DNA of 64,000 nucleotides from Zootoca vivipara (GCF_963506605.1 NC_083276.1:84630001-84694000); one strand, 5' to 3'. Positions 1 to 64,000 are shown, numbered from the stretch's first letter. Program-made: numbers and translations. Notes: generated by a model not told the origin, from the sequence alone.

Positions 1-57
1 TGCGGAAAGTGAAGGTGAATTCGGGTCCTGGGTGTGGTCTTGACCCGGAGGGCCCAC
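1..57 (-). CDS. DNAJB2: DNAJB2 copy 1, G/F-region exon (partial)
   Basis: ttcccccacag acceptor at 60-58, phase 1, [19 protein letters not shown]. Confidence 0.85.
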   Translation of the reverse strand, partial: MGPPGQDHTQDPNSPSLSA

Positions 58-3000
58 CTGTGGGGGAAGCAGAGACCAAATGTGAGCCTTTATTTTCCTC
101 ACACCAAGGCACTGGCTTACTGTTTACCAAGGTTAAGGCCGTGGCACCCTGGAGCGCCTTGAATGACGGCCGGGGTGCCACGGGCAATGTTGTTTTCTGT
201 CCCTCTTTTCTTCTCTCCCTCCTCTGATGCCCTCTTGCATCTCTGCCTCCCAAAGCCTTGCACAGCTGTTTGTTGCAGCAACCCTGGCTAAAAGCTCCCC
301 AAACAAATGGTGCCTCTGGAGCTGGCCAGGGGGTGCTTCCCAGGCCCCTGTGGGACAGTGTGAGAAGCCACCTCTCTTTGGGGCAAGGGCAGGACCTCCG
401 TTAGTTGGTCAAGGGAGCTGTGGACTCAGAAAGGTTGAAAACCTCTGGCTTAGGGGTACTGGATAACTAAAATCATTTACATCCAAGGCCCAGCAAACCT
501 GCAGCCTGCCAGCCAGCCATGCCTTGTTATGTCTGCAGCCCCTGGAAATACCCCGTATATACTCGAGTATAAGCCGACCCGAATATAAGCCGAGGCACCT
601 AAATTTACCCCCCAAAACTGGGAAAACTTACTGACTTGAGTATAAGCTGGTTCACCACACCACAAACCGGCGGAGGAGGAAGGAGCAGCCCCAAAGGGCT
701 GCTTTCATTTTTTTTAAACATAATTTTTATTGATTTTACAAATTACAAAAAAAAACGGTACATACATGAACACCTTTTCCACCTTCTTCCCACCCCCCTC
801 CATGGGTCCTCCCCTGCCACAGAAGTATCCCACGCAGGTGAACAGTCAGAGATGGTCCATTTTATGGTTGGATTTCTGTCCTCCTCCCCCTCCCCTGCCC
901 CAAAGCCCCCCCCCTGCCACCAGAGAGCTCCAGGAAATCAGGGCAGTACGCAGGAAGGCATCCATCCAACCATCTATTCTCATACCAAAAAGAATTAAAA
1001 AAAGAAAAAAGAAAAAAGGACAAAAAAAGAAGAAAAAAGTAAAAGAAGAAAAAAACAAAAATAATCTTTTTTTCCACTCATAATTAATAAACCATATTTT
1101 ATGGGCTTCCCCGACCTCCCCCCTTCCCCGGTTTTCGTCCCTTTTTTATCCTCTTCAACAGTTTCTTAATCTATAATATAATTACCTTTATACCTCATAC
1201 TATTTTAAAACTTGACTATTATCATTTTCACCGAATATCTAAATCACTAAAAAATCAAACTCCAATTTTTCTTCCCGTGCCTAATTTTTTTCCCCTCTAT
1301 AAGCCTCCATATTTTCACCTTTTTCCAAAATCAATTCACTTTTAAACTATAACTATTCCCAATCTAACCTTTCATCCCCAATTTCCGGCTCCAACCCTCC
1401 AATCCAGCAAGTTCCATAGTCAGCAGTCCAGTTTTAATCCTAATAATCCATCCTATCAATCACAACCCCGCTCTCCCTTCACCCCACCCCCTTTTTGCAG
1501 TATTTTGCCATCCAGGCCTCCATACAGCACCCCTGAGTTTCTTCTCTTCTCTGATTATTTTTTTCCTCTTCCCTGTGGGCATTCTGGAGTTCCAGTAAAT
1601 CCAATCGTACCCCCCTCAAAAGGAGGGCACTCCACATGACTTTTTGTAGAGTAAAATCGTCTTTTCTTTCATGGTGAGCTTCATTTTGTATTATATTATC
1701 ACAGTCATCGTCTTCATCTTTTCGTTCCAAATCACAGTCCCCATCATTGTCAAAATCCTCCAAATCTCTGTCACTATCATTCTCACACTCATCCTCCTCA
1801 GTTTCAGTAGCTTCATCCTCTAAGAACTCATATTCCGCCATCACCATCTGGAATTGTTGCTTTAACTCTTGCTGTTGTGTCTCATCTTGACATAGTCCTA
1901 TTCTTACTTCCCACATGATGGTCAAAACAGTCCGCTGGAACTCAGGCGAATACCTTTTTGTTGACATAGTTCAATCCTGGTTACAATCTTCAATCCTGAA
2001 GAAGTGTGCATGCACACGAAAGCTCATACCAAAATAAAAACTTAGTTGGTCTTTAAGGTGCTACTGAAGGAATTTTTTTATTATAGTTCAATCCTGTCAA
2101 GGTCAAAACTTGTCACATGGGGTGGAAAATGGTCACAGTTTATTTTCTCGACTCCATTTTAACAAGCTGGCTGCATTCTCCGAATCTTAATACATAGAAG
2201 TAAAGTCCAAACTCATATTTCAAAAGCATATAAACCAAAAAATTCCAAAAAGTCCAAAAATAGAAATAAAAATAAAATTCCACTTATAAATCCCGATCAG
2301 CTCACTGGGTTGTCTGGGCTGCCGGCTCCCGGGGAAAAGAAAGGTCTTTCTGGATCTTTTCCTCTTTCTGCAGGGTATTCACGTCCCCAGTTTTTCTCCC
2401 CTTTTACCCTGCATCTAGGGGAGATCCTCTTTGATGCCTTTGAGGGAACCTTTTAAATTAAAATCTTCTGTTTACGGCTTCGGGTTTCTATTTACTGTTT
2501 CTTAAATTGCCGGTGGGGGGGGGTGGCTTCCATTTTTTTTCCTCTCTCCCAAATCCAAATTAATTTGTAATCCAAATTTTGAAATTACTTACAGTCTTGT
2601 TTCCTAATTATTTTTTCAAAAGAATCCAGCGCTCTCCGCCTTCGGCTTGAAGCTTCTCTCCGCTAGGGTAACGTTGTCGTTCAAAATGGCCCCCACGACT
2701 TCTACCCTCCTCGCTCCGGAGCTCTTATTAGAGCTTACCGGAGAGTTGGGGAGTCCGGATTGGGGCTCTGCCGAACAAAATTCGCCCCCGGGACGCTCTT
2801 CCCGGGGTTCTAAGGGGCGCAGCGTCGCTCTCGCTGCCCTCCCCACTCCTAGCAGAGACGGGTCGCCTCGGAGACGAGACGAAACCCCGCCGATCGGCGC
2901 TGGCGCTGAACCGGAAGCCCCCCAAAGGGCTGCTTTCAGGCTGCTCGTTCCTCCTCCGCTGCCTTTGCCGCTGTCGGAAATGCGCTTGGGTGGGACCCTC

Positions 3001-3679
3001 ACTCAAGTATAAGCCAAGGGGGGCTTTTTCAGTATTAAAAATGTGCTGAAAAAGTCGGCTTATACTCAAGTATATACGGTAGTTTAATCAAGCACTGATT
3101 CATGGGTCAAAAGCCACAAAAGGGCTACAGAGCTGGACAAACCCATTTTACAGAACAGAAAAACAAAACTTAAGAATCGCAAAAAAAGGGCTGTTTGGGC
3201 CATGAAAGGCCTAACTGCGCCACAGCTGCTTTGGTTTGGAACTGACAAGGCAGCCAAGATCTCAGTAGTATTCTGCTCCCCAAAAAGTTACCCAACTCTG
3301 CAAATTTCTCCCAGGAAATTTCTCCCTGTGAAAGTCGCTCAATCACACTGCTATGACAACAGCTAAAGTAGCTAATGCAGAAGGCCTGTGTGTTTCTGAG
3401 CTGCACATAAGCTATCTGCTGCCGTCTTTGTTCTTGCCCTCTTGGCAATGCAGAAATCTGCTTTGAAACCGATCCTGGTTTTTGATGATATTTGTCAGGA
3501 TAACCCAAATCCTGATCAAGCTCCTTACCTTGACCCATGAGCCCATCTTTGCCATATCTGTCATAGACTTCACGCTTGCTCTCTGAAATCAGAAAACACC
3601 TGAGTTAGATAGTTGCCCCCCAAAAAGAGGTGAGGCTCAAGCAGACATGTCTGCCATTGACTTAGTTGGGACACGGTTG

Positions 3680-3714
<35 letters not shown>

Positions 3715-6700
3715 CTGCGGGGCAGGGAATGCTACTGAGTCCTTCCTTGTCTACCCAACGCTAGTCCTACCTGGGTTAATAATTAGGAGTAATTTGCATA
3801 GCGTGCTCAGAAAACATTGCATTATTTCAGAAAAAACTTGCAACAACTGTGAGAAGTCAGCCAGCAAAATTGGGATCATATTACAGCTAGGGGCTGAGAG
3901 AGAAAACAGTTAATGAAACACACCTTCCATTTAGTCTATCTTAAAAGGCTCTCATTTCAAAGGAAGCCCAATCTTCCACGGCCAATTGTCCCACAAGGCT
4001 TAGGTGGGTGCTCTCGACTTTACCTCTCAGCTTCTAGTTCCATTATTACAGGGGTGGGAAACCTTCTTGGCTCCAGAGCCCAGACACTGGAGATTTTGCC
4101 ACAGGGCCCAATTTGACAGGTGGACCGAACAACTGGCCAGCCAATCACATGACATAATGATGGCATCACGTGTCTGACAGGAGGGTGGGGCTGACACCTG
4201 TCAAAATTCTTCCCAGAGCTTTGGGGAAGTCATTCCACACTTCAGCTTTAAACACAATGTGGGAGGTTTAAAAGAGGAATCGTGTTGGAAGGGACACCGA
4301 GGGTCATCTAGCTGAATCCACTGCAATGCAGGAATCTCAGTTAAAGCATCCATGACAGGTGGCTTAAAAACCTCCAAGGAAAACAGGAACATGAAGAGAC
4401 TTGCAACGCACCCTTCGAAGCAGTCTCCACCCACTCATTTAAAGATACTTTAAGATGCCTTAGCTTGCTAGTGCTCTGCCTCTGCTTGAAAAACGTGCCT
4501 CTTATTCTCCCTTCTCTGCTTTGTTTTATTTTGGTAAATAAAAATGGCAGCTGGGGGGAGGCAGAAACCTCCCACCAACCCCAGGCAGTATGGCCAAAGG
4601 TCTGGGCTTACAGGAGCTGTTGCCCAACCATATCTTGATGGCCACAGGTCCCACATCTGCACCTTAACCCTGTGAATAAAACTCTGCGCTCCTCCTCTTT
4701 TTCCTTCTCTTACAAGGAATAGGAAATCTCCTCAGTCTCCAGAAACAGCCCTCAACCAAGGCCAAGACCCTACATGAACCAAAACAGCCTGAGGGAAAGA
4801 AAGGGGGAGGAGAGAGTCGATGCTTACTGTCCGATAGCACTTCGTAGGCTTCTGCTATCTCCTTGAACTTCTGCTCCGCATTTTCCTTGTTATCTGGGTT
4901 TTTATCCGGATGCCACTGCAAGGCTTTTTTCCTGTACCTGTTTGACAACAAGACAACCATTATAGCTTGGTGTATATTTTTTTATAGGCCCTGACAAAAA
5001 CCAAGGCCACAGACAACTTCTCTCTCCCCTCACACTGGTCACATACTGGCCTACATTCATCCTCTTATAATTAGAAGCAACCCTGCACACACACCTTTCT
5101 GCTTATGTAGACATTCTGCTTCTGTGGGAAGAGAGCTTCAACACGTGGGTCTAAATGATCCTCATTTGCTTCCAGGTGAATCTAGACTCCTCTCTGTTCC
5201 CACAGGAGCTGATAGCAGTTGATGGCCACCGCAGATGAAGCTCCAGCTCAACTAAGAGTGGTTATCAGTCATTGTTCTGCCATCTGTCCTCCACGAGGGG
5301 GCACTTCACTCCCGCAGTAGCACAAAACCCACAAAATTAAAGGTGAAAGCCAATTTACGGGTCCTTGGCTTTTCAAAGGCAAGTAGGTTGCTGCACTTCC
5401 AAAACAGGATCCATGGAGTCTCTTTCACACAGGAAGAGCAGGCAACAAGCCTGGAGATTTGCTCACCTGATAACTTGCTTCATGGGAGGCTGAGGAACAA
5501 GGGTTTCTACAATACCTCTCTCCTGTTACAGGTGTGCTGCTACCTTAGGGCACCTCCAGCTTGCACTAACACAAGGAGCAGAGTGGAGGCGTTCCCCTAA
5601 GGGGAAATTTTGGGCCAAAGGGCTCTTGGACCCTACAGCTTTCATTATACTGCAGTGCCACAAAGATCTCCTGGCACAGCACTAAGTGTCGACACGTTCT
5701 CCCTCTATTCCACCTCTGGAGTGCAGACCTTCCTGTGCTCATTCCAAAAACAAAAGCACCCCTACAAACAGCTCATCCCTCTCCATTCAATTATCTTCCT
5801 GTAAGGTGGGTTAAAAACAATGCACGAAAAAGGCTGTTCTTGTGTTTTTTTTAAAGTTTTACTTCTAGTAGATTCCTCATTTAAAATCAAATCAAATCTG
5901 AATCTTCACACAAGCTGCACAAGGTTTTGGATCAATCTCCAAGGCACTATTTAATAGCACATCAACATGCTTTAACAGTTATGACAACCAATCAGCATGT
6001 GCTTTGGTTTTCGGAAAATATACAAAATGTAGTTTGGAAACTGAATTTAAATACTTATGTTGATCTGTTCTCTTGGCAACCTAAAGCCTCCTTTTTATAT
6101 GCTATTGCTATAGTATTCTTACAGAGGTTTGTGAACGTTAATTAGGCAGCAGAGGGAAATTAGACAAACATAATATAAATCATCCCTCAATCGCAGGAAA
6201 GAAGAATTTTCAGTATTTGGCAACTAAGTACCTGCATAAGTGTGCTCTGGTTCGCCAGAAGCGGCTTTGTCATGCTGGCCACATGACCTGGAAGCTGTAT
6301 GCCGGCTCCCTCAGCCAATAACACGAGATGAGCACCGCAACCCCAGAGTCGGTCACGACTGGACCTAATGCTCAGGGGTCCCTTTACCTGCACAACAGCC
6401 CCAAGAGCTAGAAAAGATTCTCAGTACATTAGACCTGAAACTAGTAGCTACCAGGTTCTCCACAGGAAAACTAGGAGCTCGAGTGGAACCAAAAGATGGA
6501 AGCAGAAAGGGGGGGAGGACCCGAAGCACTGGCAAAATGCAGTGCCCAAGGCTAATCAGAGTCCAAGGCAAAGTTGGCAGTACAACTTACTGCCACAAAG
6601 CCACCCTGTATCCCCCTAACACTGGGAAACGCAGCGTTCTGAGTGCTCACTATTCTTGCCATAAACTTAAACAGGCTGCCCTCCACTAAACTGTGGCCGG

Positions 6701-6892
6701 GTACGCTGTGCCACCACATCCACATCTCACAGTCACACTCATAACCACCACACCAGGCACTAGGTTAGAAAAAGGTACCTTCCAGCAGTCAGTAGCCTTA
6801 GTTAGAAATGGAGAGAACGCAACTTACGCCTTTTTGATGTCATCCGGTGAGGCGCCACGGGGCACCCCCAGCACTTCATAGTAATCCACCAT
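1..6892 (-). CDS. DNAJB2: DnaJ homolog subfamily B member 2 (copy 1, probable ortholog), 5' part; continues beyond the left edge
   Basis: Coding exons 6892-6828 (65 nt, [22 protein letters not shown]), 4937-4828 (110 nt, [36 protein letters not shown]), 3582-3529 (54 nt, [18 protein letters not shown]) and 57-<1 ([19 protein letters not shown]). All have GT-AG boundaries and consistent phases. HPD is intact and FTFTFR matches DNAJB2. Confidence 0.88.
708..2919 (-). mobile_element. 2.2-kb non-autonomous L1-type retroposon
   Basis: 19-bp TSD ccccaaagggctgctttca (689-707 and 2920-2938); CpG-rich 5' end starting GGCTTCCGG; AATAAA plus A-tail at the 3' end; no RT; acidic 162-aa ORF 1479..1967. 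Confidence 0.75.
1980..2082 (+). mobile_element. Penelope-like terminal fragment
   Basis: ctgaagaagtgtgcatgcacacgaaagctcatacc...gttggtctttaaggtgctact, flanked by a 14-bp duplication atagttcaatcctg (1966-1979 and 2083-2096). Confidence 0.65.
3529..3582 (-). CDS. DNAJB2: DNAJB2 copy 1, J-domain helix IV exon
   Basis: 54 nt, tttcag acceptor and gtaagg donor, [15 protein letters not shown]. Confidence 0.9.
3681..3711. repeat. (CA)n microsatellite
   Basis: Direct observation. Confidence 0.95.
4828..4937 (-). CDS. DNAJB2: DNAJB2 copy 1, HPD exon
   Basis: 110 nt, caaacag acceptor and gtaagc donor; lies within ORF 4664..4960. Confidence 0.92.
6241..6389 (+). mobile_element. Sauria SINE, 3' half
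   Basis: Matches the full copies in the window; ends ggggtccctttacct. Confidence 0.8.
6828..6892 (-). CDS. DNAJB2: DNAJB2 copy 1, first coding exon
   Basis: ATG at 6892 in cacc-ATG-G context; donor gtaagt at 6827-6822; acceptor tttgcag ending at 6912. Confidence 0.9.
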
Positions 6893-8818: not shown

Positions 8819-11799
8819 CAACCACTGAGCCTCCTATTCTCTGACTATGGAAGCCTGACTTCAGCAAACATGGTCCACACATTTCCCAGCTTGGATCTAT
8901 AATTGCCATGACCTGGTGCTGCTGCTTTTGAAACAACTACTCTGCATAAACATTAGTTAGATGGATGACACTCCCTCTCATTGAAAAGTCTCTTCTTCCA
9001 GGATGGATAGATGGAAAGACATCTGGTTTTACAGGAATCACCTTAGGATGCTTATTGCTAAACCCATTCAGACATGCAAATAGAATAGGGTGGTACTCGA
9101 AAGAAGGTTTCTGAATGGCCCCTGCTTGGTTGCATCAGGATCTACCGGTAGGAGAGCTTGTTCCACTTCCAAAACTCTTCCTACAAAACCACAAGTGCAT
9201 AGCAACCCTGGCCCATGCCTCCTGGAGCCCAGACAGGTTTAGCAGCCCATGCTTCTAAACTCTCTGCTGGTTGGAGCCTTAGGCCAGATTCATATATGAA
9301 GAGTACTGCTTAAAACACAAGAAATGTTGCTTGTCTCCATATAGGAAGCTGCTTGGGTTATGTCAACCACAGATTGGGGATGAAATTGCCTCCAGCCAGC
9401 AAAGAGCTGCTTTGCAACCTAAAAGACCCATAGTGTGGAGATGCATCCACAACCCCACACTGTTGCTTGCACCATGGTTTTGGATTGTCAAGCAAAGTGG
9501 GGGGGGGGGGAATCTGTGAGCCTCCAGAAACCCCCAACATCTATCATCCCTAACCATCCGTTGCCATGGAGCCTATGAATCCGGGATCCATGGGGAAACT
9601 CTCCTACCCAAAGGCAACACTGAACAAGCACCTGAGCTGACCCAGACCCAGTGCACCCAAAAGGATGCTACTGGCCCATTGCCTTCCTCATTAAGTATCT
9701 TTATGCATTAAGCGGTTTAGCGGCCATTAAGTTTTAAAGAGATTAGGAGGCTGCAGGAGGAGCAAGAATAGCTACTGCAACAGCACTAAGACAGGAAAAC
9801 GACCAAGAAGGGTTTTCTGTCTCACAGTGTTGCAGCCCAGTTCTGAAGCTCAGCTTTACCTGCTGACCTGCAGATCGTTGCTTACCTGTTTGGATCATAC
9901 AAAAGGATGCTCGAGCATTTAACTCACAAGGAGAACTCCTGCAGGCTAGTGGCTATATGAATGATAAGAAATGAAATCGCAACCCCATGCTCTTTGCAGT
10001 TACAATGCAAAGATGTTCACTCTGTGGGGTTGTTTTTTAATGCTGATACTCATCAGCACTGACTCCTTTGAGCTCTCCAGTCTTGGGTTTTCAATTTATC
10101 AGATTCATGATACACCACTTCCTGTTGCCATTTCCTTTGTGGATCATCCACTCTTCTGTCAACGTGTCCTCCAAAATATAAACAAAATTGGAAGCTGGTG
10201 TGGAGATGACAGGGTGCCCCTTCACCTCTGAGTTGGGTTCTGCCTAAACTCTTTGACAGGGGTACCTTCCTTACCTCTACTTTGCTGGAACAGAAGAGGC
10301 AGAGAAGGCTTTTGCAATTGGGTGGTTTTCTTTTCTCCTCCTCTGGGAAAGAAGCAGAAAGACTCCACCTTAACATTGTTACACTAACCCCATTTCCACA
10401 TTAAAAATATTTCCCTTCTGCCCCGCCCCCAAGTTATGCAGAGACATTCCATTTGAGGTCACCCTCTGTCAAGAATGACTTTCCAACACCACCCTAAAAT
10501 ATGCAAACCAATACTAAGTACTGTAATATTAAGGACTCTGAGATCAGGGAGATGGGTTTCCAGGCCAAAGTATTTGACTTGAGACACTCTTCAGAACCTC
10601 ACCAAGTTCCCTTCCTCAGGAAAAAAGGGGGGGGCACCTTCCTACACCTTTCATTTCATTTGGCTTTTTATGGCACCAGCTCACTTCTTCAAAAGTTGCC
10701 CGAACGTAATATTCTCTTTCCTGCCTTGCCTAGTGCACATTTGTGTTTGAATCAAATTAAATCTGAATAAAATCGTCACCAACTCCCTGCCTTGTTCATC
10801 CCATCAAGCTGATCTTTTAAAACAACAAGTCCTCCTAAGGAGCTTCCACCGCCCCTTTCCATTTATCTCAATCAGCTGGTAGAATCCTACAATTTGGTTT
10901 GCAGCAGCCTGCAATCAGGGGCAGGCCTTCTCTAGAGCTCTCCTAGAAAGCGCGAGTGCTTTTGTTGCCGTTTCCCGGCGAAAATGCTTATTTGTCCCTC
11001 GCGGGGCTGGCTCTGGGCCCCCGCCTCCCCCTTTGTTTTGCGGTGCGCCACCGGATCAACAACAAGCACAACATCCGGCCGGTGAGAGAGACCGATCGCG
11101 TTTCAGTTTCTCGACTGTTCTAACAGCGCCTTTTCCCATAGCACTCATTTTCCTGCCGGCAGGAGAAAACAACCAACACGCATTCCGCGCAGGGCAGCAC
11201 CGGCGGGTTGCAAACGCCTCTTTTTCTGATGGCATTTTGGGTGGGGAAGAAACAGGCATGCCTAAAACTACCCACAGCCTCCCGGATCTTAAACCCTATT
11301 TTTGGACAGCGCGTTAGTTACTGCGGAACGAAACTCAGCTGCTCTCCCCGCGTAACGTATGTACACGCGCGCGCAACGCCCACCCGACACAAGAGCGTGT
11401 CTTGAAAGCGGGGATAACAGGGGTGGGTGATGCCACCCTTTGACCCTTCAGTCCTGCTAGATGCGGGTACGACAAGGCGATAGCAAAGGACCGAAATTGT
11501 TGTTTTTATTTATTATTCGTTGAATTTATATACCGCCCTTCTCCCGATGATCACAAGTGCGGTTTACAGTACAAAGACACGAAATAGGAAAAACAATACC
11601 CTCCCACCCCTCCTATAGAGGTAAAGCGGTTTTAAAATCGTATTGACAGCAAGCGCAACTTCGAAACACTTCTGCTGCTAGCTGCTAGAGATAGACCCTC
11701 GTCGGTGGGTCTGCAGACAGCCTCTAGCTAGCACTAGCAGGGAATCTGCCAGCTGCTCCACATTCCTATCTCGGGGATCCTAGAAAAGATCTGCATCTC

Positions 11800-12400
11800 C
11801 AGATCGCTTCATGCGGCCGCTCTCCCCTGGCCGTCATCTGCCTGACTGCCTCGCTTTTGTTTTATTGCAATGGCACCCGATGCTCCGAGAAACAAGCGGG
11901 CAGCAGGCAAGCCAGCAAGCAATCGTACCTCAGCGCTGGAGGAGGCTCCGTTCGGACTGCACCATGCTCCGCAGTTCCGCAGCCCCGCTCGCTTGGGACG
12001 CCAGTTTTTCGCCTCTCTCGCCTCCTGCTGCTGCGGCTGTCAAAGGAAGAGCGGAGGAGGGCCCCGGCCTGCAAGCCCCAGCTCGGCCCCGGGGACTGGC
12101 GCCGGCGCCGGCCAATGGAACGCGCGGCTCCATTGTGACGTCGGACCCTGCACTCTGAACCGGTGAGGTAAGGCGAGGCGGCCGCGGCCAACAGCTGCTC
12201 GAGGCTCCGGTGGAATTCTCTGGGGCGCGCTTGCGACGGGCGGCGCGTGGAGCCCCCTCCCGGCCCCACGCGGATGTGCGCTGCGACTCTGGTACGCCGA
12301 TGAACGCCCTTGTGGGTGGAAACATCTCGCAGCATCACAGGCTGCAACGCGTGCAGGACGCACTCTTACCTGGGAGTAAGGCTCGTCGAACTCCCTGGGG
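11800..12400 (-). promoter_or_regulatory. CpG-island promoter and probable non-coding first exon of copy 1
   Basis: GC/CpG-rich; CCAAT at 12112-12116; CRE-like TGACGTCG at 12136-12143; candidate minus-strand donor GAG|gtacga with exon end at 11929. Confidence 0.7.
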
Positions 12401-12520
12401 CTGACTTCAGAGTAGACACGTCTAGGGTTACACTGTCAGGCAGCCCTGGGTCTCAGGTTGCAGCTTTTCTGTCTGAACCTGATGCTCAGTGCTACATGAA
12501 TTTCATTCCCACTAGTGTTC

Positions 12521-12523
<3 letters not shown>

Positions 12524-12568
<45 letters not shown>
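12524..12568. repeat. (AAT)n microsatellite
   Basis: Direct observation. Confidence 0.95.
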
Positions 12569-16104: not shown

Positions 16105-16646
16105 TCAGAGGACAGTGCACATGATGGATTCCCTCTCCCTGTGGGAAGGGATAATGTCGGGGAAGACATACCGCATGTCATTGAGGACCGAGTCATTCTC
16201 TTCAGGGGCCGCCGGCAAGGCGAGCTGCTGCTTCTCCGGTTCTTCAGTGCAGCCTCTGCCCTTTGGGCCTTCTGCTGGCTTGTCTTCCTTTGTGCTGTCT
16301 CCTGCACCCGGGCTCCTGGCTCTAATGGGAAAGGGAGCACCCGCCACTTCCTCGCTGAGCCCTGGCGTCCTTTTGTGTGCCCGCCAAGTGCCGCCTCGCC
16401 TCTTCCTGGAGCTGTCTCGGGCGGCGCCTGCCAGGTGCTGCTGCCCCAAGGTCTCCATCTCAGACAGGCTGTAGGCCAGGGTGGCCCGATGCAGCTCCTT
16501 GTCTTCGTCGTCAGGGTGGGCGCAAGAGAACCCTGCGCTCTGTGGGCGTGGCGGAGTCGGGATGTCCGTAGCAGACGAGCGCAGGATCTCGCGTTGCTCT
16601 GGCTGGATGAGCTCCACCGTGGCCTTCATGTCATTGTTGGTGAGGT
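16105..16646 (-). CDS. copy 2, terminal exon (UIM-like region and CaaX)
   Basis: Part of ORF 16105..16698 after the ctcctccag acceptor; [19 protein letters not shown]; ends CTVL-stop. Confidence 0.88.
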
Positions 16647-49467: not shown

Positions 49468-49521
<54 letters not shown>

Positions 49522-51953: not shown

Positions 51954-52009
<56 letters not shown>

Positions 52010-52202
52010 TTATACCCCGCCCTCCCCAGTCAAAAACCAGGCTCAGGGCGGCTCACACCAACAAAACCACAATAAAACATAAAAACAATTAATTAAAATA
52101 CAGTATTAAAATTTAAAATGCAGTCTCATTTCAAGTAGTCCATAAATCCAGGCCATGGTATCTGGAGTCTAACCAAGGGCTACAGGTTACCCATCCCTGA
52201 TT

Positions 52203-52255
<53 letters not shown>

Positions 52256-55243
52256 TTATACCCCGCCCTCCCCAGTCAAAAACCGGGCTCAGGGCGGCTC
52301 ACACCAACAAAACCACAATAAAACATAAAAACAATTAATTAAAATACAGATTAAAATACAGTATTAAAATTTAAAATGCAGCCTCATTTCAAGTAGTCCA
52401 TAAATCCAGGCCATGAGGGAGGAAAACACAGGAGTCAGGCTAAGTCCAACCCAAAGGCCAGGCGGAACAGCTCTGTCTTGCAGGCCCTGCGGAAAGATGA
52501 CAAATCCTGCAGGGCCCTGGTCTCCTGGGAAAGAGCGTTCCACCAAGTTGGGGCCAATACTGAAAAGGCCCTGGCTCTAGTAGAGGCCAATCTAGCCATC
52601 TTATGGCTGGGGATCTCCAAAGTATTGTTGTTTGTGGACCTTAAGGTCCTCCGCGGGGCATACCAGGAGAGGCGGTCCCGTAGGTACAAGGGTCCCAAGC
52701 CGCATAGGGCTTTAAAGGTCAAAACCAGCACCTTAAACCTGATCCTGTACTCCACCGGGAGCCAGTGCAGCTGGTAAAGCACTGGATGAATGTGATCCCA
52801 CGGCCGGGACCCCGTAAGGAGCCTCGCCGCGGCATTCTGCACCTGCTGGAGTTTCTGGGTCAGTTTTAAGGGCAGCCCCGCGTAGAGCGAGTTACAATAA
52901 TCAAGCCTGGAGGTGACCGTCGCATGGATCACTGTGGCCAGATCAGGGCGAGAGAGGTAAGGGACCAACTGCTTAATACGGCGGAGATGGAAAAATGCCA
53001 CCTTTGCTGTGGATGCAACCTGCGCCTCCTTGGAAAGGGAGGCGTCGAAGGTTACACCCAAACTCTTGACAGAAGGCGCTGGCACTAATTGAGTCATCTT
53101 ATCATCTGTGACGAAGAAGATTTTTCCTGGACTGTCTGTCACTTACCTCTTCCCAGTAGCCCATCCTTACCCCAGCGGTCATAGATGTCACGTTTGTTCT
53201 CTGAAAAGGAGAAAGAATAAGAAGTCAACCAACCCGCCATCCAATCTCAGAGACAGTGGTTTCTAACAGCAATCTGGCATGCCATGCTGGATCTTGAATA
53301 ACAGGCGCATCACCTGGAAGCAGAAACCACTGTAGGCGCATATAGGCTGTCAGCATTTCACAGGAGGGATTCAAGCACATACAAGAACTTTAGGTTTGTG
53401 TGATTAAAAAAGATGAAAGGGCTCCATCACTCTACCAGCACAACAAATCCACTTGAGAAAAACCCGGACTTTTTGCAGTTAGGAGAGAGATGGGGAATTG
53501 CATTGAAAAGTATGAGATGAACGAAGGAGGAATGGACAGGTGTATCAAATGATGCATGGGCAGAATTGCCATATAACTGTCCCATAAACAAATTGGAACA
53601 AATGCTCAATAAAGACCAGACATAGTCTAACCACAGTGTAAGCTTTGTGCAAGCAAATCTGGATGGATGCTCAATAAATAGTCCATTTGGAGGAGCCCTG
53701 CTTCTGCCAGTGTTCTTCCAACGATAGCATGTAGTTTGAAACTTGAAAATGCATCTTTGCCACAAAATGACCAGGACAGATTAACCATTGTTAAAATCGT
53801 GTTTATGGAAGACAATCTTACTCGGCTACGAGTGATTACCAAAGAAGAAAGAAAGAAGAAAGAATACTTACTGTCTGAAAGTACTTGATAGGCTTCTGAA
53901 ATCTCCTTGAATCTCTGTTCTGCAAATTGCTTGTTTTCTGTGTTTTTATCTGGGTGCCACTTTAGAGCTTTCTTCCTGTATCTTTATGGTTCCCCAGAAA
54001 ACACAATGGATGATAAAAGTCAGTATCCCTGTGACCATTTCTACTACTACAGATTTGTGTATGGTTAGCCGTATTTTTCCTGACACCAGGGCAAGGAAGG
54101 GAGCAGACTCCTCCTGTCCCTAGTCTCCATTTCTTCCAGAAGCAAAAAAGACTTCAGCTTTCCCTCAGCAAGCTTCTCATTACTTCATGGCATGCACTAT
54201 GGCCATCCAAACCATACCGGTCTATCTCAGCTTATGTGAGGGCGTGTTCTATGAAACTCCTGTATAGATGGCACCACACACCAGGGCGAATTGCCCACAT
54301 GAAATTACAATCTTCTCAGAATTGTTGTGGGAAAAGAGACACCTTTTCGCACCTATGCTAAGACTTCCTACAGGTACTGTAGGTAGGTCATCAAGAAATG
54401 ACCAAAAAAGTCAGCTATCCCATTCCAACGTCACAACAGATTCTGTGGGACTATCAGCTGAAAGAGTTCAACTCTCAGGAACTTTTGACACGGATCTTGG
54501 TGGCTGCCAGAACTTAAAGGTGGCATTTTTTCATCTCCGCCAAGCTAAGCAGTTGGCTCCTTACCTCTCTCACCCTGACCTAGCCACTGTAATACACGCG
54601 ATAGTCACCTCCAGGTTTGATTATTGTAACTCACTCTACGTGGGGCTGCCCTTGAGACTGACCCAGAAACTCCAGCGGGTGCAGAATGCCGGGGTAAGAC
54701 TCCTTACGGGGTCCTCGCCGCGGGATCACATTCACCCTGTGCTATACCAGCTGCACTGGCTCCCGGTGGAGTACAGGATCAGGTATAAGGTGCTGGTTTT
54801 AACCTTTAAAGCCCTATACGACCAAGGACGCTCATACCTATAGGACCACCTCTCCTGGTATGTCCCACGGAGGGCCTTATGGTCTTCAAATAAAAACATC
54901 TTGGAGATCCCGGGCCACAGGGAGGTTAGGCTGGCCTCGACCAGAGCCAGGGCTTTTTCGGCCATGGTCCCGAGACTAGGGCCCTGCGGGACTTGACATC
55001 TTTCCGCAGGGCCTCCAAGACCGAGCTGTTCCGCCAGGCCTTTGGCCAAGGCAAAGTCTGACCCACTCTCTCCTTCTGTAATCCTCACAGAACTCTAACC
55101 CAATGGTTCCTATTAATTTGATTCTGAATTGATTTTAGAATGGATTTTAATTGACTGTGTGATTTTATGTACACTGTGCTATTTTTACTTGTTGTTAGCC
55201 ACTCTGAGCCCGGCTTTGGCTGGGAAGGGCGGGATACAAAAAA

Positions 55244-55274
<31 letters not shown>

Positions 55275-57202
55275 TGCCTCCCAAATGGAAAACCTTAAGG
55301 GTCTTGTATTAGCTGGAAAAAACCCCTCATAAATTACATGTTGGCAAATGCTTGGAGGATCCTGAAAATTTATATGCTGTTTGGTGGAGTTTTATTATAT
55401 ATACAACAAATACAGACACACTAAAAATAAAATAAAATAAAACCTGCTGTCAGGGAGTTGTTGCGGCTACTCCCGAGTAAAGTCCGTTTTGTCTGTGCAT
55501 ACTATTTACAGTGCAGAGATAGCAGAAAACATGACCTCCTAGTCACTCTCAGAACCCAGGAATGGCGCCCGTCGGCTTCAGGGTGACCATAATAATCTGG
55601 GCACCCCGAAACACCACCCCTTCACCCTGTGTTTGGGCATGTGCCTCAATTTGGGGGCCAGAAGGAGCGGTGCCCCTTCTTCCCCTGGCCAGTTGGGGCA
55701 GTGCCTGGCCTCCTACATCTCCCTGAGCCGTCCCTCCTCCACTTGTTGGTCAGAGTGGTGTAGGGGCTCTGATGCCTCGCTGAGCCTTCCCACCTCCATT
55801 CCACTTCCCCCTGACCCGCTGCTAGCGCTGTCACTGGGCGAAGTGCTGGTCAGGATGATGGGGGGAGGCTCCCTGTAGGGAGTCTCCCTGACACCTGCCC
55901 TCAGCAAGCCTCTCCCATAAGAGGAGTCAGGGAACCAGCCCAAAAATCAGACAGTGAGGCAACCCGGGCTGGCTCTAGGGGTAGGCTGGGTGGCGCGGTG
56001 CGCCAGGGCACTGGGCCAGCAGGGTGGGCGACGTGTGGCAAAGCTGCGTGGAAGCCGTGCTGTGCGCTCCCACCAGGGCGGGGGCACCGGAGCGATCTCC
56101 GCACCACGGCGCCAGGGCGCCCGACATGCTTGAGACGGCCCTGGAGGCAACCTAATAATATAGCGGTCTAGCAGTAGATTCTGTAGTACAAGGGTAGCAA
56201 AATGTGACTATTCTGTGGTATTATTCTTTCTTGTGGTAATATACAGTATTAAGAAGCGTGGCTTCCAAATGCATCATAGCTGCCAAGTTTTCCCTTTTCT
56301 CGCGAGGAAGCCTATTCAGCATAATGGAAAATCCCTTTAAAAAAGGGATAACTTGGCAGCTATGATGTTTGGGCTAAGGAATTCAGCAGAGTGAAGCAGC
56401 TGCTTCATGTAGAAAATGCTGGCTGGGGTGGGATGAAGAGTGGTGGCAAGGTTTTGGAGGACTGAGGTGCGCCAGGAACTGAATCCTTGCATAAGGTTTT
56501 AGCCCTGACATTGGAATAGGTTCTGAGACTAAACCCTAGTGAGCCTTGTATCAAATTTTCATGGTGAGAGATAGAACCAGGGTACTAGTGCTATCGCCTA
56601 ATTAAAGGAACTCTCAGCAGATTCAGGTGAGGTATGTGAACATTGCAGTAGGCATCCTTTTTAAGAAAATCCCAGAACAATGGGATTTGCTCAGTAAAGG
56701 ATTTGCAATACAGAAAGGGGAATCTTTCTTTTGTTGAGGTTGAAATTTAGTGTGGTGCTGTTGTTTTAAGTTGTGTTTTTTTAAAAAAATATATTCTTTT
56801 TTTGAAAAAACTGCTGCTTGATTTAGCAGGGCATGCTTTTCATCGATCATTTTTGTTGTTGCTGCTGTTGATCTGATCTAGCTGATTAATCAGTTACAGT
56901 AAATGTTGCAGCCTCCCCTAGACTGTGCCTAAACAGATGCCTGATCTCTAGAATAAAAAAATAACCGGCACCTATCGTGCTAGAGCCCAACTATCTCTTC
57001 CTTCCTTGACACCAAAAGTATAGCAAGAGGTGAAAGGTCCCTCCAGACCCCATATTGGCCGAGAGGCTGGGAGGGCAACGTCTCTCTTAAGAGCATGGAA
57101 GATGGTAATGGGGTGGACATGGGGAAGAGGCACTTACGCTTTCTTAATGTCATCCAAGGAAGCATTCTGGGGGAGACCCAGAGCTTCATAGTACTCGACC
57201 AT
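45796..57202 (-). CDS. DNAJB2-like paralog (copy 4), 7 coding exons, 256 aa, acidic tail without UIM or CaaX
   Basis: Exons 57202-57138 (65), 53981-53872 (110), 53200-53147 (54), 51441-51331 (111), 50370-50268 (103), 46931-46861 (71) and 46052-45796 (257) total 771 nt in frame. Motifs: [55 protein letters not shown] at 45355-45350. Confidence 0.87.
46081..46651. mobile_element. hAT-type non-autonomous element
   Basis: cagagcttttcaacc and ggttgaaaaccactg ends; TSD ggttagac/ggttagat. Confidence 0.7.
46861..46931 (-). CDS. copy 4, CTD exon
   Basis: [24 protein letters not shown], 71 nt. Confidence 0.92.
47853..48211 (-). mobile_element. Full-length Sauria SINE
   Basis: Matches the other copies; abuts the (tta)n tail of an L2-like 3' end at ~47700-47852. 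Confidence 0.88.
48660..49914. mobile_element. hAT-type element containing a purine-rich microsatellite and the assembly gap
   Basis: caggggtgtcaaac and gtttgacacccgtg ends; 8-bp TSD ttgtagag. Confidence 0.75.
49113..49298. other. Assembly gap (N run)
   Basis: 186 N bases. Confidence 1.
50268..50370 (-). CDS. copy 4, S/T-CTD exon
   Basis: [34 protein letters not shown], 103 nt, gtgagg donor. Confidence 0.87.
50909..51143 (+). mobile_element. Bov-B/RTE LINE 3' fragment
   Basis: [21 protein letters not shown]...RWLD C-terminus and (caa)n tail. Confidence 0.9.
51331..51441 (-). CDS. copy 4, G/F exon
   Basis: [37 protein letters not shown], 111 nt. Confidence 0.9.
51602..51737. mobile_element. 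136-bp hAT-type MITE
   Basis: TSD ttataggg. Confidence 0.85.
51957..53100 (-). mobile_element. 5'-truncated L2-clade LINE with duplicated 3' end
   Basis: ORF 52435..53142 ([13 protein letters not shown]...QNAAARLL...LHWLPV) is the L2 ORF2 C-terminus; (tta)n tail. Confidence 0.88.
53147..53200 (-). CDS. copy 4, coding exon 3
   Basis: [18 protein letters not shown], 54 nt, GT-AG. Confidence 0.9.
53872..53981 (-). CDS. copy 4, HPD exon
   Basis: [36 protein letters not shown], 110 nt; weak acceptor ggggaaccataaag. Confidence 0.9.
54516..55272 (+). mobile_element. 5'-truncated L2-clade LINE
   Basis: Same L2 motifs in ORF 54268..54843 with a premature stop; (tta)n tail. Confidence 0.88.
55448..55893. 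mobile_element. Solo LTR
   Basis: tgtcagggag...ctccctgaca ends (TG..CA) with 5-bp TSD cctgc. Confidence 0.75.
56276..56363. mobile_element. Tiny MITE
   Basis: TIR catagctgccaagtt and aacttggcagctatg. Confidence 0.6.
57138..57202 (-). CDS. copy 4, first coding exon
   Basis: [22 protein letters not shown], gtaagt donor. Confidence 0.9.
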
Positions 57203-62122: not shown

Positions 62123-62853
62123 TAGTGGACCATTAATATTCATATTAGGATAATAATATCAAATTTGTAAAAGAATGTATGGGTTAGGGTATTTTTGTAT
62201 ATATTCATATAATGTTTTTCCCCCTTAAAAAAAAGTAGTTCAGAGAAAATCCCAACCACTGTGTGATATACCCGACACTTAATATAGGATACATAGTTGT
62301 GTTCATGGTACAGAACTTAGTACAGAACCCCTGCTGTTCCAATGTCGGAAACAATGAGGTGTGCAGGGCATCCAGAGGTTACACCCATGGTTTTCATCCC
62401 ACGATAGAACCACAGATCATTACATTAATCCACCCCCTCCATCCACCCCCACTTATCTATATTCCAAACCTTTGCTTTCAGTCTTCAAGAGTAAACAGAA
62501 AATGCTTTTAATTTTGAAACAGAAATGGCCTCTAATGCCAGCAAGCTATGCCAGTGAAGTGTCCAATGAACTGCAGATGTGGTCCATTTACAAACGTTTT
62601 TTCCAAATTGCAACACTTGGGATTTGCTGGCACAGAATCTGGAACATAGCACCACCTGTTAGCACAATGATCATTCCCTACCTTCTTTACTCTTTCAAGT
62701 AGTTTCCAGGACTTTGCAGGCTAGTCTCAAGCAGCTTCTATGTCCTTGGCTTTTAAATGAAATTACAGCGGAGCACAACCTGGAAAATTTTTCACTTCCA
62801 CCCTTTATTATGCATCTCTCCAGCTTCCGGGGATTTATAAGGTTCTCCTTGGT

Positions 62854-63999
62854 CTAGGAGTTATAGGAGCAGCTGGAAGGGGAGGTCAGGGGAGAGGAGA
62901 AACTGCCCCTGCCAGGGATCTTATTTACTCTGCTCAGGAGCCTGCCAGAGATATCTGGGAGATGAGGTGTCATTCCCCCTCCTGTCCAGTAGGCTCCTCT
63001 TGGGATGTGTGCATGGATTGCTCTGCCGACGCATGGATTCCTGTCCCCTCTGGGCCAGTTGGAATGGTCTACAAATATATGGTTTCCACACAGGAAAGGA
63101 TTGCCTCCAGTATGGAGCTGCCTTGCCCCTCTCTGAGGTGGGTTGTTTATGTTGGGGAGCTGGCTCATACTGCTTGCCCACTTGTCTCCTTCTGAAATGG
63201 GCTCTTTGGAAGGCTGGTGCCCTCTGCACAAAAGCTTCCTCGTTCCATCCAGGAATTTCCTCATGCCTCCCAGAAGCCCTTCCGAGCTCTCCACTGGCTG
63301 CTTCCTGCCTCCATTGGGTCCCTGACCCTGCTCCTCAGGTGGCACAGCTGGCGGAGTACTTCCAGTTGTCCCCCTAAGGGAGGCGGGTGATGCTTCATTG
63401 CGACCCGAAGACGGCCTGCTTCCAGAAGCCGGCCTGTAGCCAGCAGGTCCTTGAGCATCTTCAGCATCTCCAGAAGATGGATCCAGAGGGTCGTGGGAGT
63501 AGCCACATCTGGGATGTGAGATGCATTCCCTCTGAGGGTTATTCCAACCCGTAGGGAACTCAAATTCAGGAGTCGTGGCATCTTTAAGCTCCGATTCATT
63601 CTGCTGCGGGGGCCACTCATACACAGGTGAGTACTCGCAATCATATGGAGACTCGTACACCGGGGAGTCCTTGCAGGTATAGTGCGTTTCGTATATTGGA
63701 GGAGTATCGTAGCCGTATTGCCATTCATACAAAGAAGAGTTGTCGAACCTGTACTGAGACTTTGGTCCAGAGGTCTCATATATGTATGGCGAATCAGATG
63801 GAGAGAAGTCATCATCGTACTGTGACTCATAAATGGGGGAGTATCTGCAGCTATACCGAGGGTCATATATGGTAGAAAACTCATACGCATTTTGTGACTC
63901 GTACACAGGAGAGGCTGTGTATTTACAATGGGCTCCATTTTTCTTCACAGGAGATGAGCACCTGGAAGGCATCTCATAAGCCGTGTAAGAACTGCATCC
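62854..63999 (-). CDS. Terminal exon of an upstream gene encoding Tyr-rich 12-aa repeats; possible fifth DNAJB2-family copy
   Basis: ORF 62854..63972 stays open to the window edge (>=381 aa); AATAAA at 62809-62804; same strand and array-like spacing; repeated SP[VI]YE motif. Confidence 0.7.
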   Translation of the reverse strand, partial: GCSSYTAYEMPSRCSSPVKKNGAHCKYTASPVYESQNAYEFSTIYDPRYSCRYSPIYESQYDDDFSPSDSPYIYETSGPKSQYRFDNSSLYEWQYGYDTPPIYETHYTCKDSPVYESPYDCEYSPVYEWPPQQNESELKDATTPEFEFPTGWNNPQRECISHPRCGYSHDPLDPSSGDAEDAQGPAGYRPASGSRPSSGRNEASPASLRGTTGSTPPAVPPEEQGQGPNGGRKQPVESSEGLLGGMRKFLDGTRKLLCRGHQPSKEPISEGDKWASSMSQLPNINNPPQRGARQLHTGGNPFLCGNHIFVDHSNWPRGDRNPCVGRAIHAHIPRGAYWTGGGMTPHLPDISGRLLSRVNKIPGRGSFSSPLTSPSSCSYNS

Positions 64000-64000
64000 A

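What the first reader, a model, noticed from the sequence alone, without database searches (positions are those of the whole stretch)
1..64000. Tandem array of 4-5 DNAJB2-derived co-chaperones with a conserved HPD J-domain and completely different C-terminal modules
Seen: four head-to-tail minus-strand genes share DNAJB2-type exon sizes and phases, have open spliced frames and an intact HPD, yet the three complete copies end differently (UIM-like plus CaaX; a 546-aa charged tail; a short acidic Tyr-containing tail). A fifth large terminal exon follows at array-like spacing. Established: DNAJB2 is single-copy in human, and HPD stimulates Hsp70 ATPase while C-terminal regions set client and location. 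Inference: a lineage-specific expansion producing a modular family of Hsp70 adaptors by terminal-exon replacement. The introns show no obvious mutual similarity while the frames remain intact, which suggests old duplications under selection.
Basis: partly seen in the sequence, partly recalled or inferred. Interest (0 to 1): 0.92.

Follow-up and report, generated by a model that had tools for sequence, protein, structure and literature searches.

The report
Lizard DNAJB2 co-chaperone gene array
This stretch of the common lizard genome holds five neighbouring descendants of the DNAJB2 co-chaperone gene that keep the Hsp70-activating J domain but carry very different tails; four of the five types also occur in other lizards and snakes, so this is an old, conserved gene family that I found in none of the papers searched.

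Summary
The window is Zootoca vivipara. It carries four head-to-tail minus-strand J-domain genes (c1 to c4, high to low coordinates) plus the terminal exon of a fifth (c5).

- **Gene models.** Every splice junction is AG/GT, frames are open and HPD is intact. Exon sizes and phases are shared.
- **Tails.** c3 (355 aa) ends in a UIM plus CaaX, like DNAJB2. c1 (256 aa) has a short acidic tail. c2 (624 aa) is identical to NCBI LOC118082318: J helices I-III, then a 546-aa tail predicted disordered. c4 is cut off by the window start.
- **Assembly gap.** It lies in c1 intron 5 and touches no exon.
- **Conservation.** c1, c2, c3 and c5 each have orthologues in other lizards and snakes under unrelated automatic names.
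- **Origin.** In a tree all types fall in the vertebrate DNAJB2 clade (88/93). The order of duplications, a turtle link and c2's own origin are unresolved.
- **Selection.** Paralogues have saturated dS and dN/dS of 0.07-0.20.
- **Not supported.** "Terminal-exon replacement" is only partly right, and three RNA runs gave no reads on c2.

Verdict: a real, old, conserved DNAJB2-derived family, already predicted in public annotation but absent from the papers searched. Interest is moderate. The scan noted c2 and c5 before, on this same DNA.

The parts
62854..64000 (-). c5: terminal exon (partial, runs off the window end) of a fifth J-protein gene. It has Tyr-rich repeats of the form xSPxYEx. Stop codon at 62854-62856; AATAAA 45 nt after the stop.
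   Evidence: ORF. Its 14 squamate orthologues of about 610-660 aa mostly carry PF00226. Their N-termini hold a full J domain plus the FTFRSPW.VFREMFG motif. Six Tyr motifs are counted. PolyA hexamer.
45796..57202 (-). c1: 7-exon gene, 256 aa. Exons 57202-57138, 53981-53872, 53200-53147, 51441-51331, 50370-50268, 46931-46861, 46052-45796. HPD at 53956-53948. It has a J domain, a G/F motif, a short S/T stretch, a C-terminal-domain motif and an 86-aa acidic tail (PIYEV at 45954-45940) that ends ...HIPEF.
   Evidence: AG/GT at all junctions, open frame. Snake orthologues of 264 aa are 78-83% identical and the tail is conserved. Exon 2 scores 54.1 bits against Pfam DnaJ.
49113..49298 (.). Assembly gap inside c1 intron 5, next to a 400-bp purine-rich tract (49299-49700).
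   Evidence: Exon 5/6 phases match. Snake orthologues show no extra residues at this junction.
32542..40979 (-). c2: 3-exon gene, 624 aa, identical to NCBI LOC118082318. Exons 40979-40855, 39296-39187, 34181-32542. HPD at 39271-39263. It has a 22-aa N-terminal extension, J helices I-III only, then a 546-aa tail: an acidic Ser cluster (34065-33871), a basic middle part and conserved C-terminal motifs (32907-32818 and 32592-32545). A possible in-frame alternative acceptor would start the exon at 34220 (+13 codons).
   Evidence: model equals P0003. (no exon 3-6 homologues). (12 orthologues aligned). (only residues 21-80 fold confidently). (Pfam DnaJ positions 1-56 of 63). (acceptor homology).
16105..25710 (-). 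c3: 7-exon gene, 355 aa, the most DNAJB2-like tail. Exons 25710-25646, 22451-22342, 21509-21450, 20597-20481, 18758-18656, 17306-17236, 16646-16105. HPD at 22426-22418, UIM at 16506-16447, CaaX (CTVL) at 16119-16108.
   Evidence: The tail aligns with the mammalian, shark and turtle DNAJB2 UIM and CaaX. Naja orthologue P0068. Tail orthologues P0001 and P0002.
1..6892 (-). c4: partial gene, cut by the window start. Exons 6892-6828, 4937-4828, 3582-3529, 57-1. HPD at 4912-4904. Its J domain is the closest to mammalian DNAJB2 (77% over 95 aa).
   Evidence: (2lgw 64.1 bits against DNAJB6 57.5).
29019..30376 (.). CpG-island-like stretch 3.3-4.7 kb upstream of c3's ATG exon, probably the c3 promoter. 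A copy with one mismatch lies at 23138-24495 in c3 intron 1.
10851..12550 (.). CpG-island-like stretch upstream of c4's ATG exon, probably the c4 promoter. No such island lies upstream of c1 or c2.

Best explanation
The window holds part of a conserved tandem array of DNAJB2-derived J-domain protein genes in the lizard Zootoca vivipara, in the order c5-c1-c2-c3-c4 on the minus strand. All arose by old tandem duplication of a DNAJB2-type gene.

Each keeps an N-terminal J domain with HPD. This is the element that docks on Hsp70 and stimulates its ATPase (established for the family; inferred here).

What differs is the part that chooses clients or location:
- c3 keeps the ancestral DNAJB2 equipment: G/F motif, short S/T stretch, C-terminal domain, one UIM and a CaaX box. 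It probably acts like the membrane-anchored, ubiquitin-binding HSJ1b form.
- c1 keeps the core but has lost the UIM and CaaX in favour of a conserved acidic tail.
- c5 keeps the J domain and G/F motif, has a remodelled core, and has a last exon expanded to about 460 aa with Tyr repeats.
- c2 is reduced to J helices I-III fused to a 546-aa disordered tail with conserved short motifs.

The c2 tail most likely arose when the ancestral exon 3 stopped being spliced at its donor and ran on (inferred).

c3 and c4 have CpG-island promoters and look broadly expressed. c1 and c2 lack them and look tissue-restricted (inferred).
For: - Gene models are intact with canonical splice sites and shared exon sizes and phases.
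- Exon 2 of each copy passes the Pfam DnaJ threshold on its own (42-58 bits against a cut-off of 27.8).
- For each exon 2 the best PDB hits are human DNAJB2, then B3, B6 and B8, about 15-20 bits above DNAJB1.
- Orthologues: c2 in 12 or more squamates, c5 in 14, c1 in snakes and a cordylid, c3 in Naja.
- In the careful tree each type is its own clade: c3 100/99, c5 100/100, c2 99/94, c1 85/98. All lie inside a vertebrate DNAJB2 clade (88/93) that excludes fish DNAJB6b and amphioxus.
- Linkage elsewhere: c5 and c2 are two locus tags apart in Phrynocephalus; there is a fused c5+c1 model in Crotalus adamanteus; c1 and c5 share an 804-kb C. tigris scaffold.
- Purifying selection: paralogue dN/dS is 0.07-0.20 with saturated dS. 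c2's J domain is 79% identical between lizard and python, against 40% for the middle of the tail.
- A polyA hexamer follows each stop within 18-48 nt.
- AlphaFold finds only the J domain folded in c2 and c5.
Against: - No RNA support was obtained. Three RNA-seq runs of the species, about 6% of each read, gave zero depth on the start of c2's terminal exon. On c2 exon 2 there were only about 31-nt cross-matches. The tissues are unknown.
- c2 lacks helix IV. It also has Ser where helix III normally has a conserved Phe, and this is invariant in its orthologues. Its Hsp70 stimulation may therefore be weakened or altered.
- With only about 58 residues, c2's DNAJB2 ancestry is not proven by sequence (p-AU 0.20 for placing it outside the DNAJB2 clade).
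- Only one true DNAJB6 was in the tree, and no tetrapod B6, B3, B7 or B8.
- c4 is incomplete.
- All orthologue models are computational predictions.
Confidence: 0.8

Rival explanations
1. The expansion is not squamate-specific. It dates to the ancestor of reptiles or earlier, turtle genes are orthologues of particular squamate copies, and other lineages lost copies.
For: Pelodiscus has at least three different DNAJB2-like proteins, two of them on one 411-kb contig with adjacent accession numbers. In the quick trees turtle K7FEW0 is sister to the c1 clade (SH-aLRT 96), or grouped with it at weaker support. Chrysemys 'DNAJB2' has a c1-like N-terminus and a c3-like tail.
Against: In the careful tree the turtle-c1 link dissolves into a polytomy. 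A tree with all squamate copies as one clade is not rejected (p-AU 0.198). No tail homologues of c2 or c5 were found outside squamates, but that search depends on shared words.
Confidence: 0.35
2. c2, and perhaps c5, is an annotation chimera: a J-domain relic (exons 1-2 of a dead DNAJB2 copy) joined by gene predictors to an unrelated downstream ORF that is a separate gene or no gene.
For: There are no RNA reads on c2 in three runs. Two homologues lack the J domain (P0015, P0012). The tail has no Pfam family, no Atlas look-alike and no predicted fold. A Met codon sits at the second residue of the Zootoca tail.
Against: Eleven of 14 homologues carry J domain and tail in one model across different annotation projects. 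Exon 2 is the best conserved part of the protein and its HPD is invariant, which a relic would not keep for this long. The Met at the start of the tail is not conserved in snakes, Anolis or Pogona. The phase of the exon 2 donor fits the acceptor. A 546-codon ORF is kept open from lacertids to snakes.
Confidence: 0.1
3. The J exons of c2 come from another DNAJB lineage (DNAJB6-type) that moved into the array, not from DNAJB2.
For: The AU test does not reject c2 on the non-DNAJB2 side of the tree (p 0.203, log-likelihood difference 3.2). In the PDB search the margin of DNAJB2 over B3, B8 and B6 is under 3 bits for c2.
Against: c2 lies between two DNAJB2-type genes, in the same orientation and at array spacing. 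Its exon 2 has exactly the same length (110 nt) and phases. The free tree puts it inside the DNAJB2 clade. DNAJB2 is still its top PDB hit.
Confidence: 0.07
4. The copies are an assembly artefact, such as collapsed or duplicated haplotypes.
For: An assembly gap lies in the region. A 1358-bp segment is duplicated at 99.93% identity.
Against: The copies are only 63-71% identical at the nucleotide level in shared exons, with saturated dS. The introns are unrelated. Four types (c1, c2, c3, c5) have their own orthologues in other species.
Confidence: 0.01

Closest known systems
Human DNAJB2 (HSJ1a/HSJ1b; PDB 2lgw holds its J domain)
   Same: It has an N-terminal J domain with HPD, and it is the best PDB hit for exon 2 of all four copies. 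c3 also shares the FxFR..VFREFF motif, the S/T stretch plus the ENGQER.E..DG C-terminal motif, one UIM and a C-terminal CaaX box.
   Different: From general knowledge, there is a single gene in human; here there are at least five in tandem. The first UIM is degenerate in c3. c1 has no UIM or CaaX. c2 has nothing after J helix III in common. c5 has a remodelled core and a roughly 460-aa Tyr-rich last exon.
DNAJB6 / DNAJB8 (PDB 6u3r, 2dmx)
   Same: They have the same architecture as c1 and c3 (J domain, G/F, S/T-rich, short C-terminal domain) and nearly the same PDB scores for exon 2. NCBI names the snake c1 orthologues 'DNAJB6-like'.
   Different: In the tree the fish DNAJB6b falls outside the clade that holds c1-c5 and the DNAJB2 proteins (88/93). 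The array sits at the locus of the UIM/CaaX-bearing gene. The S/T stretch is much shorter here.
Public gene models: LOC118082318 (Zootoca), LOC103279114 (Anolis), 'DNAJC21-like', 'cylicin-1-like', 'nipped-B-like', 'SRRM2-like', 'DNAJB6-like' in other squamates
   Same: These are the same genes. c2 equals LOC118082318 residue for residue. The others are orthologues of c2, c5 and c1.
   Different: The automatic names are unrelated to each other and none points to DNAJB2. No paper in the searched library mentions these loci or a reptile DNAJB2 expansion.
Mammalian DNAJB3 / DNAJB7 / DNAJB8 (lineage-specific extra copies of the B6 type; from memory, not tested)
   Same: They are another case in which the DNAJB2/B6 group spawned extra lineage-specific members that keep the J domain and change the rest.
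   Different: As far as I recall, those are dispersed and mostly intronless. The copies here are tandem, keep their introns and have long new tails.

Membership tests
J-domain proteins (Pfam PF00226) | His-Pro-Asp motif between helices II and III | tested here: met
   HPD is present in c1-c4 and invariant in the c2 and c5 orthologues.
J-domain proteins (Pfam PF00226) | Profile score above the curated threshold | tested here: met
   Exon 2 alone scores 54.1, 57.7, 57.6 and 42.1 bits against a cut-off of 27.8. P0003 (= c2) scores 68.3 bits.
J-domain proteins (Pfam PF00226) | Complete four-helix J fold including helix IV (KRxxYD) | tested here: not met
   This row applies to c2 only. c2 covers profile positions 1-56 of 63, its model shows three helices, and no exon-3 homologue is spliced in. 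c1, c3, c4 and c5 do have KR..YD.
J-domain proteins (Pfam PF00226) | Stimulates Hsp70 ATPase | not testable with these tools
   This needs a biochemical assay. c2 has Ser in place of the conserved helix III Phe.
DNAJB2/B6 subgroup of class B | J domain closest to DNAJB2/3/6/8 rather than DNAJB1 or the A and C classes | tested here: met
   The top four PDB hits for each copy are DNAJB2, B3 (HCG3), B6 and B8, with DNAJB1 about 15-20 bits lower.
DNAJB2/B6 subgroup of class B | FxFR..VFR.FFGG.DPF motif, S/T stretch and ENGQER.E..DG C-terminal motif | tested here: met
   Met in c1 and c3. c4 shows the start of the motif before the window ends. c5 orthologues keep the first motif and a degenerate C-terminal motif. 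It is not met in c2.
DNAJB2 proper | Falls in the DNAJB2 clade of a family tree | tested here: inconclusive
   All types lie inside a clade with shark, fish, axolotl and mammal DNAJB2 (88/93). However, only one DNAJB6 was sampled, and for c2 the alternative is not rejected (p-AU 0.20).
DNAJB2 proper | Ubiquitin-interacting motifs after the C-terminal domain | tested here: inconclusive
   c3 has one clear UIM that aligns with the DNAJB2 UIM, but the first UIM is degenerate and Pfam reports nothing. c1, c2 and c5 have none.
DNAJB2 proper | C-terminal CaaX box (long isoform) | tested here: met
   Met in c3 only: it ends CTVL, aligned with mammalian CLIL and shark CLLS. c1 ends ...HIPEF, c2 ...FNDNL and c5 ...SYNS.
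DNAJB2 proper | Position at the DNAJB2 locus (conserved neighbours) | not testable with these tools

The most novel reading that the evidence does not exclude
Squamates, possibly all reptiles, have kept for well over 100 million years a family of DNAJB2-derived Hsp70 adaptors. In these the J domain is coupled to fast-evolving disordered tails that carry conserved short motifs. Examples are a multi-tyrosine repeat scaffold in c5, and in c2 an acidic serine cluster plus a Cys-rich C-terminus on a J domain that lacks helix IV. If so, these are new classes of J-domain protein that bring Hsp70 to lineage-specific clients or compartments, perhaps in a restricted tissue such as testis.
Probability: 0.45. 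Interest if true: 0.65.

Novelty: new variant of a known kind. Interest (0 to 1): 0.5.

Why it matters
J-domain proteins decide where and on what Hsp70 works, and DNAJB2 is a human neuropathy gene. A conserved reptile array is a natural experiment in how co-chaperone specificity evolves: one J domain has been combined with a ubiquitin/membrane tail, an acidic tail, a tyrosine-repeat tail and a 546-residue disordered tail.

The c2 type tests whether a three-helix J domain with a changed helix III still drives Hsp70.

The result also corrects public annotation. The same gene family is currently filed under 'DNAJB6-like', 'DNAJC21-like', 'cylicin-1-like', 'nipped-B-like', 'SRRM2-like' and 'uncharacterized'.

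It is not a new kind of system. Gene-family expansion with tail divergence is common among J-proteins.

Tried and rejected
- **RNA support.** No indexed RNA run holds the c2 terminal exon. I laid three raw RNA runs of the species on 33800-39400. Depth was zero on the terminal exon. Reads piled only on two SINE-like repeats, plus nine roughly 31-nt cross-matches on exon 2 that carry the c4 base. This is no support, and it is also not evidence of silence.
I could not fetch synteny in other species or DNA for codon-based tests on orthologues.
- **Tails.** There were no Pfam families, no usable ESM Atlas look-alikes and no confident fold, so no fold search was run.
- **Idea that c2's conserved C-terminal motif descends from the DNAJB2 G/F exon.** hhalign picks that pairing as its best alignment, but at E = 0.21 and probability 0.3%. 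Not supported.
- **Search for exon 3-6 remnants in c2's intron 2.** Nothing above chance.
- **AU tests.** Neither a squamate-only clade nor c2 outside DNAJB2 is rejected.
- **c3 last-exon search.** It found only two short Logan fragments, because full-length c3 (355 aa) exceeds the tool's length window.
- **Joined spliced models.** The models of c1, c3 and c4 were never sent to a search tool. They were assembled by coordinates inside local scripts only, for translation, alignment, dN/dS and trees. Searches used single exons by reference, or database proteins.

Full report
**Identity of the window.** The 565-codon ORF at 34239-32545 matches NCBI protein LOC118082318 of Zootoca vivipara at 100% (P0003). 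My three-exon spliced model of that gene equals P0003 residue for residue. The window is therefore common-lizard DNA.

**Checking the observation.** A six-frame scan finds HPD[KR]N on the minus strand at 53956, 39271, 22426 and 4912. I number the genes c1 to c4 from high to low coordinates, which is the direction of transcription.

I found exons in three ways: by self-comparison, by motif searches, and by reading splice sites. Models assembled by coordinates have AG and GT at every junction and no internal stop.

| Gene | Exons (window coordinates) | Length |
|---|---|---|
| c1 | 57202-57138, 53981-53872, 53200-53147, 51441-51331, 50370-50268, 46931-46861, 46052-45796 | 256 aa |
| c2 | 40979-40855, 39296-39187, 34181-32542 | 624 aa |
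| c3 | 25710-25646, 22451-22342, 21509-21450, 20597-20481, 18758-18656, 17306-17236, 16646-16105 | 355 aa |
| c4 | 6892-6828, 4937-4828, 3582-3529, 57-1 | cut by the window start |

- Exon sizes are 65, 110, 54-60, 111-117, 103 and 71 nt, and the phases are shared.
- Start-to-start spacing is 15.3-18.8 kb.
- A polyA hexamer follows each stop codon within 18-48 nt, as expected of separate transcription units.
- The ORF at 63999-62857 (stop at 62854-62856) is the last exon of a fifth gene, c5, whose other exons lie beyond the window.

**The assembly gap.** The N run at 49113-49298 lies 970 nt downstream of c1 exon 5 and 2.2 kb upstream of exon 6. It sits beside a 400-bp purine tract.
- Exon 5 leaves phase 2 and exon 6 enters in phase 2.
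- c3 has no exon between its homologous exons.
- The snake c1 orthologues read ...ITTKR|I.EDGQER... with no extra residues.

The gap is intronic and no frame depends on it. I did not try to fill it.

**What the genes are.** Exon 2 of each copy alone passes the Pfam DnaJ threshold. Each hits human DNAJB2 (2lgw) best in the PDB, followed closely by DNAJB3, B6 and B8, and about 15-20 bits above DNAJB1. The margin for DNAJB2 is 6.6 bits for c4, 1.9 for c1, 1.8 for c2 and 0.4 for c3.

- **c1 and c3** also have helix IV (KR..YD), the FxFR..VFR.FFGG.DPF motif, a short S/T stretch ending ...NGK.ITT.R, and the ENGQER.E..DGELK motif. This is the DNAJB2/B6 architecture.
- **c3's last exon** aligns with the UIM and the CaaX box of mammalian, shark and turtle DNAJB2. 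Its first UIM is degenerate.
- **c1's last exon** starts GVP..., like DNAJB2. It then carries a conserved acidic tail that ends ...DESHI(P/D)EF.
- **c2** has a conserved 22-residue N-terminal extension and J helices I-III, then the 546-residue tail. No homologue of exons 3-6 lies in its 5-kb second intron.
- **c5 orthologues** have a full J domain and FTFRSPW.VFREMFG, a remodelled but conserved core, a degenerate C-terminal motif, and then the Tyr-repeat exon seen in this window.

**Conservation.**
- The c2 tail finds 14 squamate proteins: lacertids, Rhineura, iguanians, agamids, boas, pythons, vipers and colubrids. Eleven of them carry a J domain.
- The c5 tail also finds 14.
- A profile of the four exon 2 pieces searched against 1.84 billion representatives, with names looked up, gave these:
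  - c1 orthologues in Vipera, Pantherophis, Crotalus and Hemicordylus (named 'DNAJB6-like' or 'uncharacterized');
  - a c3 orthologue in Naja;
  - several turtle DNAJB2-like proteins;
  - a sixth squamate J type that is not in this window.
- Linkage in other species:
  - locus tags JRQ81_001956 (c5) and JRQ81_001958 (c2) in Phrynocephalus;
  - a fused c5+c1 model in Crotalus adamanteus;
  - c1 and c5 on one 804-kb scaffold in C. tigris.

**Tree.** I built a careful IQ-TREE of 42 rows by 207 columns. The c2 rows were cut to the J domain and the others to the shared core.
- Each type is its own clade: c3 100/99, c5 100/100, c2 99/94, c1 85/98.
- All lie in a clade with axolotl, shark, fish and mammal DNAJB2 (88/93). 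That clade excludes fish DNAJB6b, a catfish protein, amphioxus and three unnamed representatives not looked up.
- Relations among the types, and with the turtle genes, are a polytomy.
- The bootstrap had not fully settled.
- AU tests reject neither a squamate-only clade (p 0.198) nor c2 outside DNAJB2 (p 0.203).
- No tetrapod DNAJB6, B3, B7 or B8 was available.

DNAJB2 derivation is therefore well supported for the array as a whole. For c2 it rests mainly on position and exon structure.

**Selection and age.** Between window paralogues the shared exons are 63-71% identical in DNA. dN is 0.21-0.32, dS is 1.2 to above 2.9 or undefined, and dN/dS is 0.07-0.20. Outside exon 2 the copies share only interspersed repeats.

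In c2, identity between Zootoca and python varies by region:

| Region of c2 | Identity, Zootoca vs python |
|---|---|
| J domain | 79% |
| C-terminal 129 residues | 57% |
| Acidic Ser cluster | 52% |
| Basic middle | 40% |

The exon 2 part is almost invariant. These are old genes under constraint.

**How the tails arose.**
- c1, c3 and c5 keep seven exons. Their differences lie in the same last exon and, in c5, in the core. This is divergence and expansion in place rather than replacement.
- For c2, the DNA just upstream of the annotated acceptor still resembles the ancestral exon-3 acceptor.
- An AG two bases further on would give an in-frame exon start at 34220, adding 13 codons.
- The Lacerta, Anolis and snake models keep a 17-residue segment there that begins NK(R/H/C), like exon 3.
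- They then read through the place where the exon-3 donor G|GT used to be.

I infer that the c2 tail began as read-through of exon 3 with loss of exons 4-7. This is an inference, not a demonstration. No homology between the tail and DNAJB2 exons is detectable (hhalign E = 0.21).

**Structure.** AlphaFold with the orthologue alignments gives a confident three-helix J domain for c2 (residues 21-80, pLDDT 88-95), with everything else below 50 apart from short weak helices (residues 554-569, pLDDT 57-59). For c5 it gives a four-helix J domain (pLDDT 62-83) and a disordered remainder. The tails are best read as disordered regions with conserved short motifs.

**Expression.**
- No indexed RNA run holds the c2 exon.
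- Three raw RNA runs of the species, about 6% of each read, gave no depth on c2's terminal exon. Their reads pile on two SINE-like repeats.
- Nine short matches on c2 exon 2 all carry C at 39266. That is the c4 base at the homologous codon, and they cover only the 31 nt that c2 and c4 share. They are most likely c4 transcripts.
- CpG-island-like stretches lie upstream of the ATG exons of c3 and c4 but not of c1 or c2. This hints that c3 and c4 are broadly expressed and c1 and c2 are not (inference).

**Function (inferred).** All copies should recruit Hsp70 through the HPD J domain.
- c3 should behave like prenylated, ubiquitin-binding DNAJB2b.
- c1 looks like a soluble DNAJB2/B6-like chaperone with a new acidic C-terminus.
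- c5 and c2 look like adaptors whose disordered tails bind other partners.
- c2 lacks helix IV. It also has an invariant Ser where helix III normally has Phe. From memory, that Phe matters for DnaJ activity, so c2's activity needs testing.

**Novelty.** The genes exist as automatic predictions under unrelated names. Four literature searches found nothing on them or on a reptile DNAJB2 expansion. I rate this a new variant of a known kind, of moderate interest.

**Limits.**
- The joined models of c1, c3 and c4 were not sent to any search tool.
- c4's tail lies outside the window.

Noticed in passing
window 23138-24495 and 29019-30376: A 1358-bp direct duplicate with a single mismatch, 5.9 kb apart. 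Both copies look like CpG islands (GC 0.66, CpG o/e 0.79). One lies upstream of c3's ATG exon and the other inside c3 intron 1. It is either a very recent duplication or an assembly error.
   Followed up: partly
window 10851-12550: A CpG-island-like stretch lies between c3's 3' end and c4's ATG exon, probably the c4 promoter with a non-coding first exon. No comparable island lies upstream of c1 or c2.
   Followed up: partly
window 21123-21317 and 50948-51142: A 195-bp element is 98.5% identical in non-homologous introns of c3 and c1. From memory, its translation resembles the 3' end of BovB-type retroposons. This was not tested.
   Followed up: no
window 18015-18164, 34293-34448, 38728-38883, 51601-51737: These are copies of a SINE-like repeat. 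In three RNA runs the two copies in c2's intron are covered hundreds-fold by reads at 95-99% identity with many different flanks, so this repeat family is abundantly transcribed somewhere in the genome.
   Followed up: partly
window 52220-53005 and 54516-55274: An inverted pair of retroelement-like ORF fragments (77% identical) lies in c1 introns 1 and 3. There was no Pfam hit at E up to 1.
   Followed up: no
window 39266: All nine RNA reads of run X13 over c2 exon 2 show A>C here and match only about 31 nt. This equals c4's sequence at the homologous place, so it is indirect evidence that c4 is transcribed.
   Followed up: partly
not in the window (proteins P0147, P0139): There is a further squamate-only J-domain type (Crotalus adamanteus NXF25_001690, Salvator merianae A0A8D0C0E2). 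It forms its own long-branched clade inside the DNAJB2 group, and in C. adamanteus its locus tag is 84 away from that of the c5+c1 fused model.
   Followed up: no
window 1482-1970 (minus strand): A 163-codon acidic ORF lies inside c4 intron 3, with only a weak low-complexity Pfam match. It is probably chance or repeat-derived.
   Followed up: no
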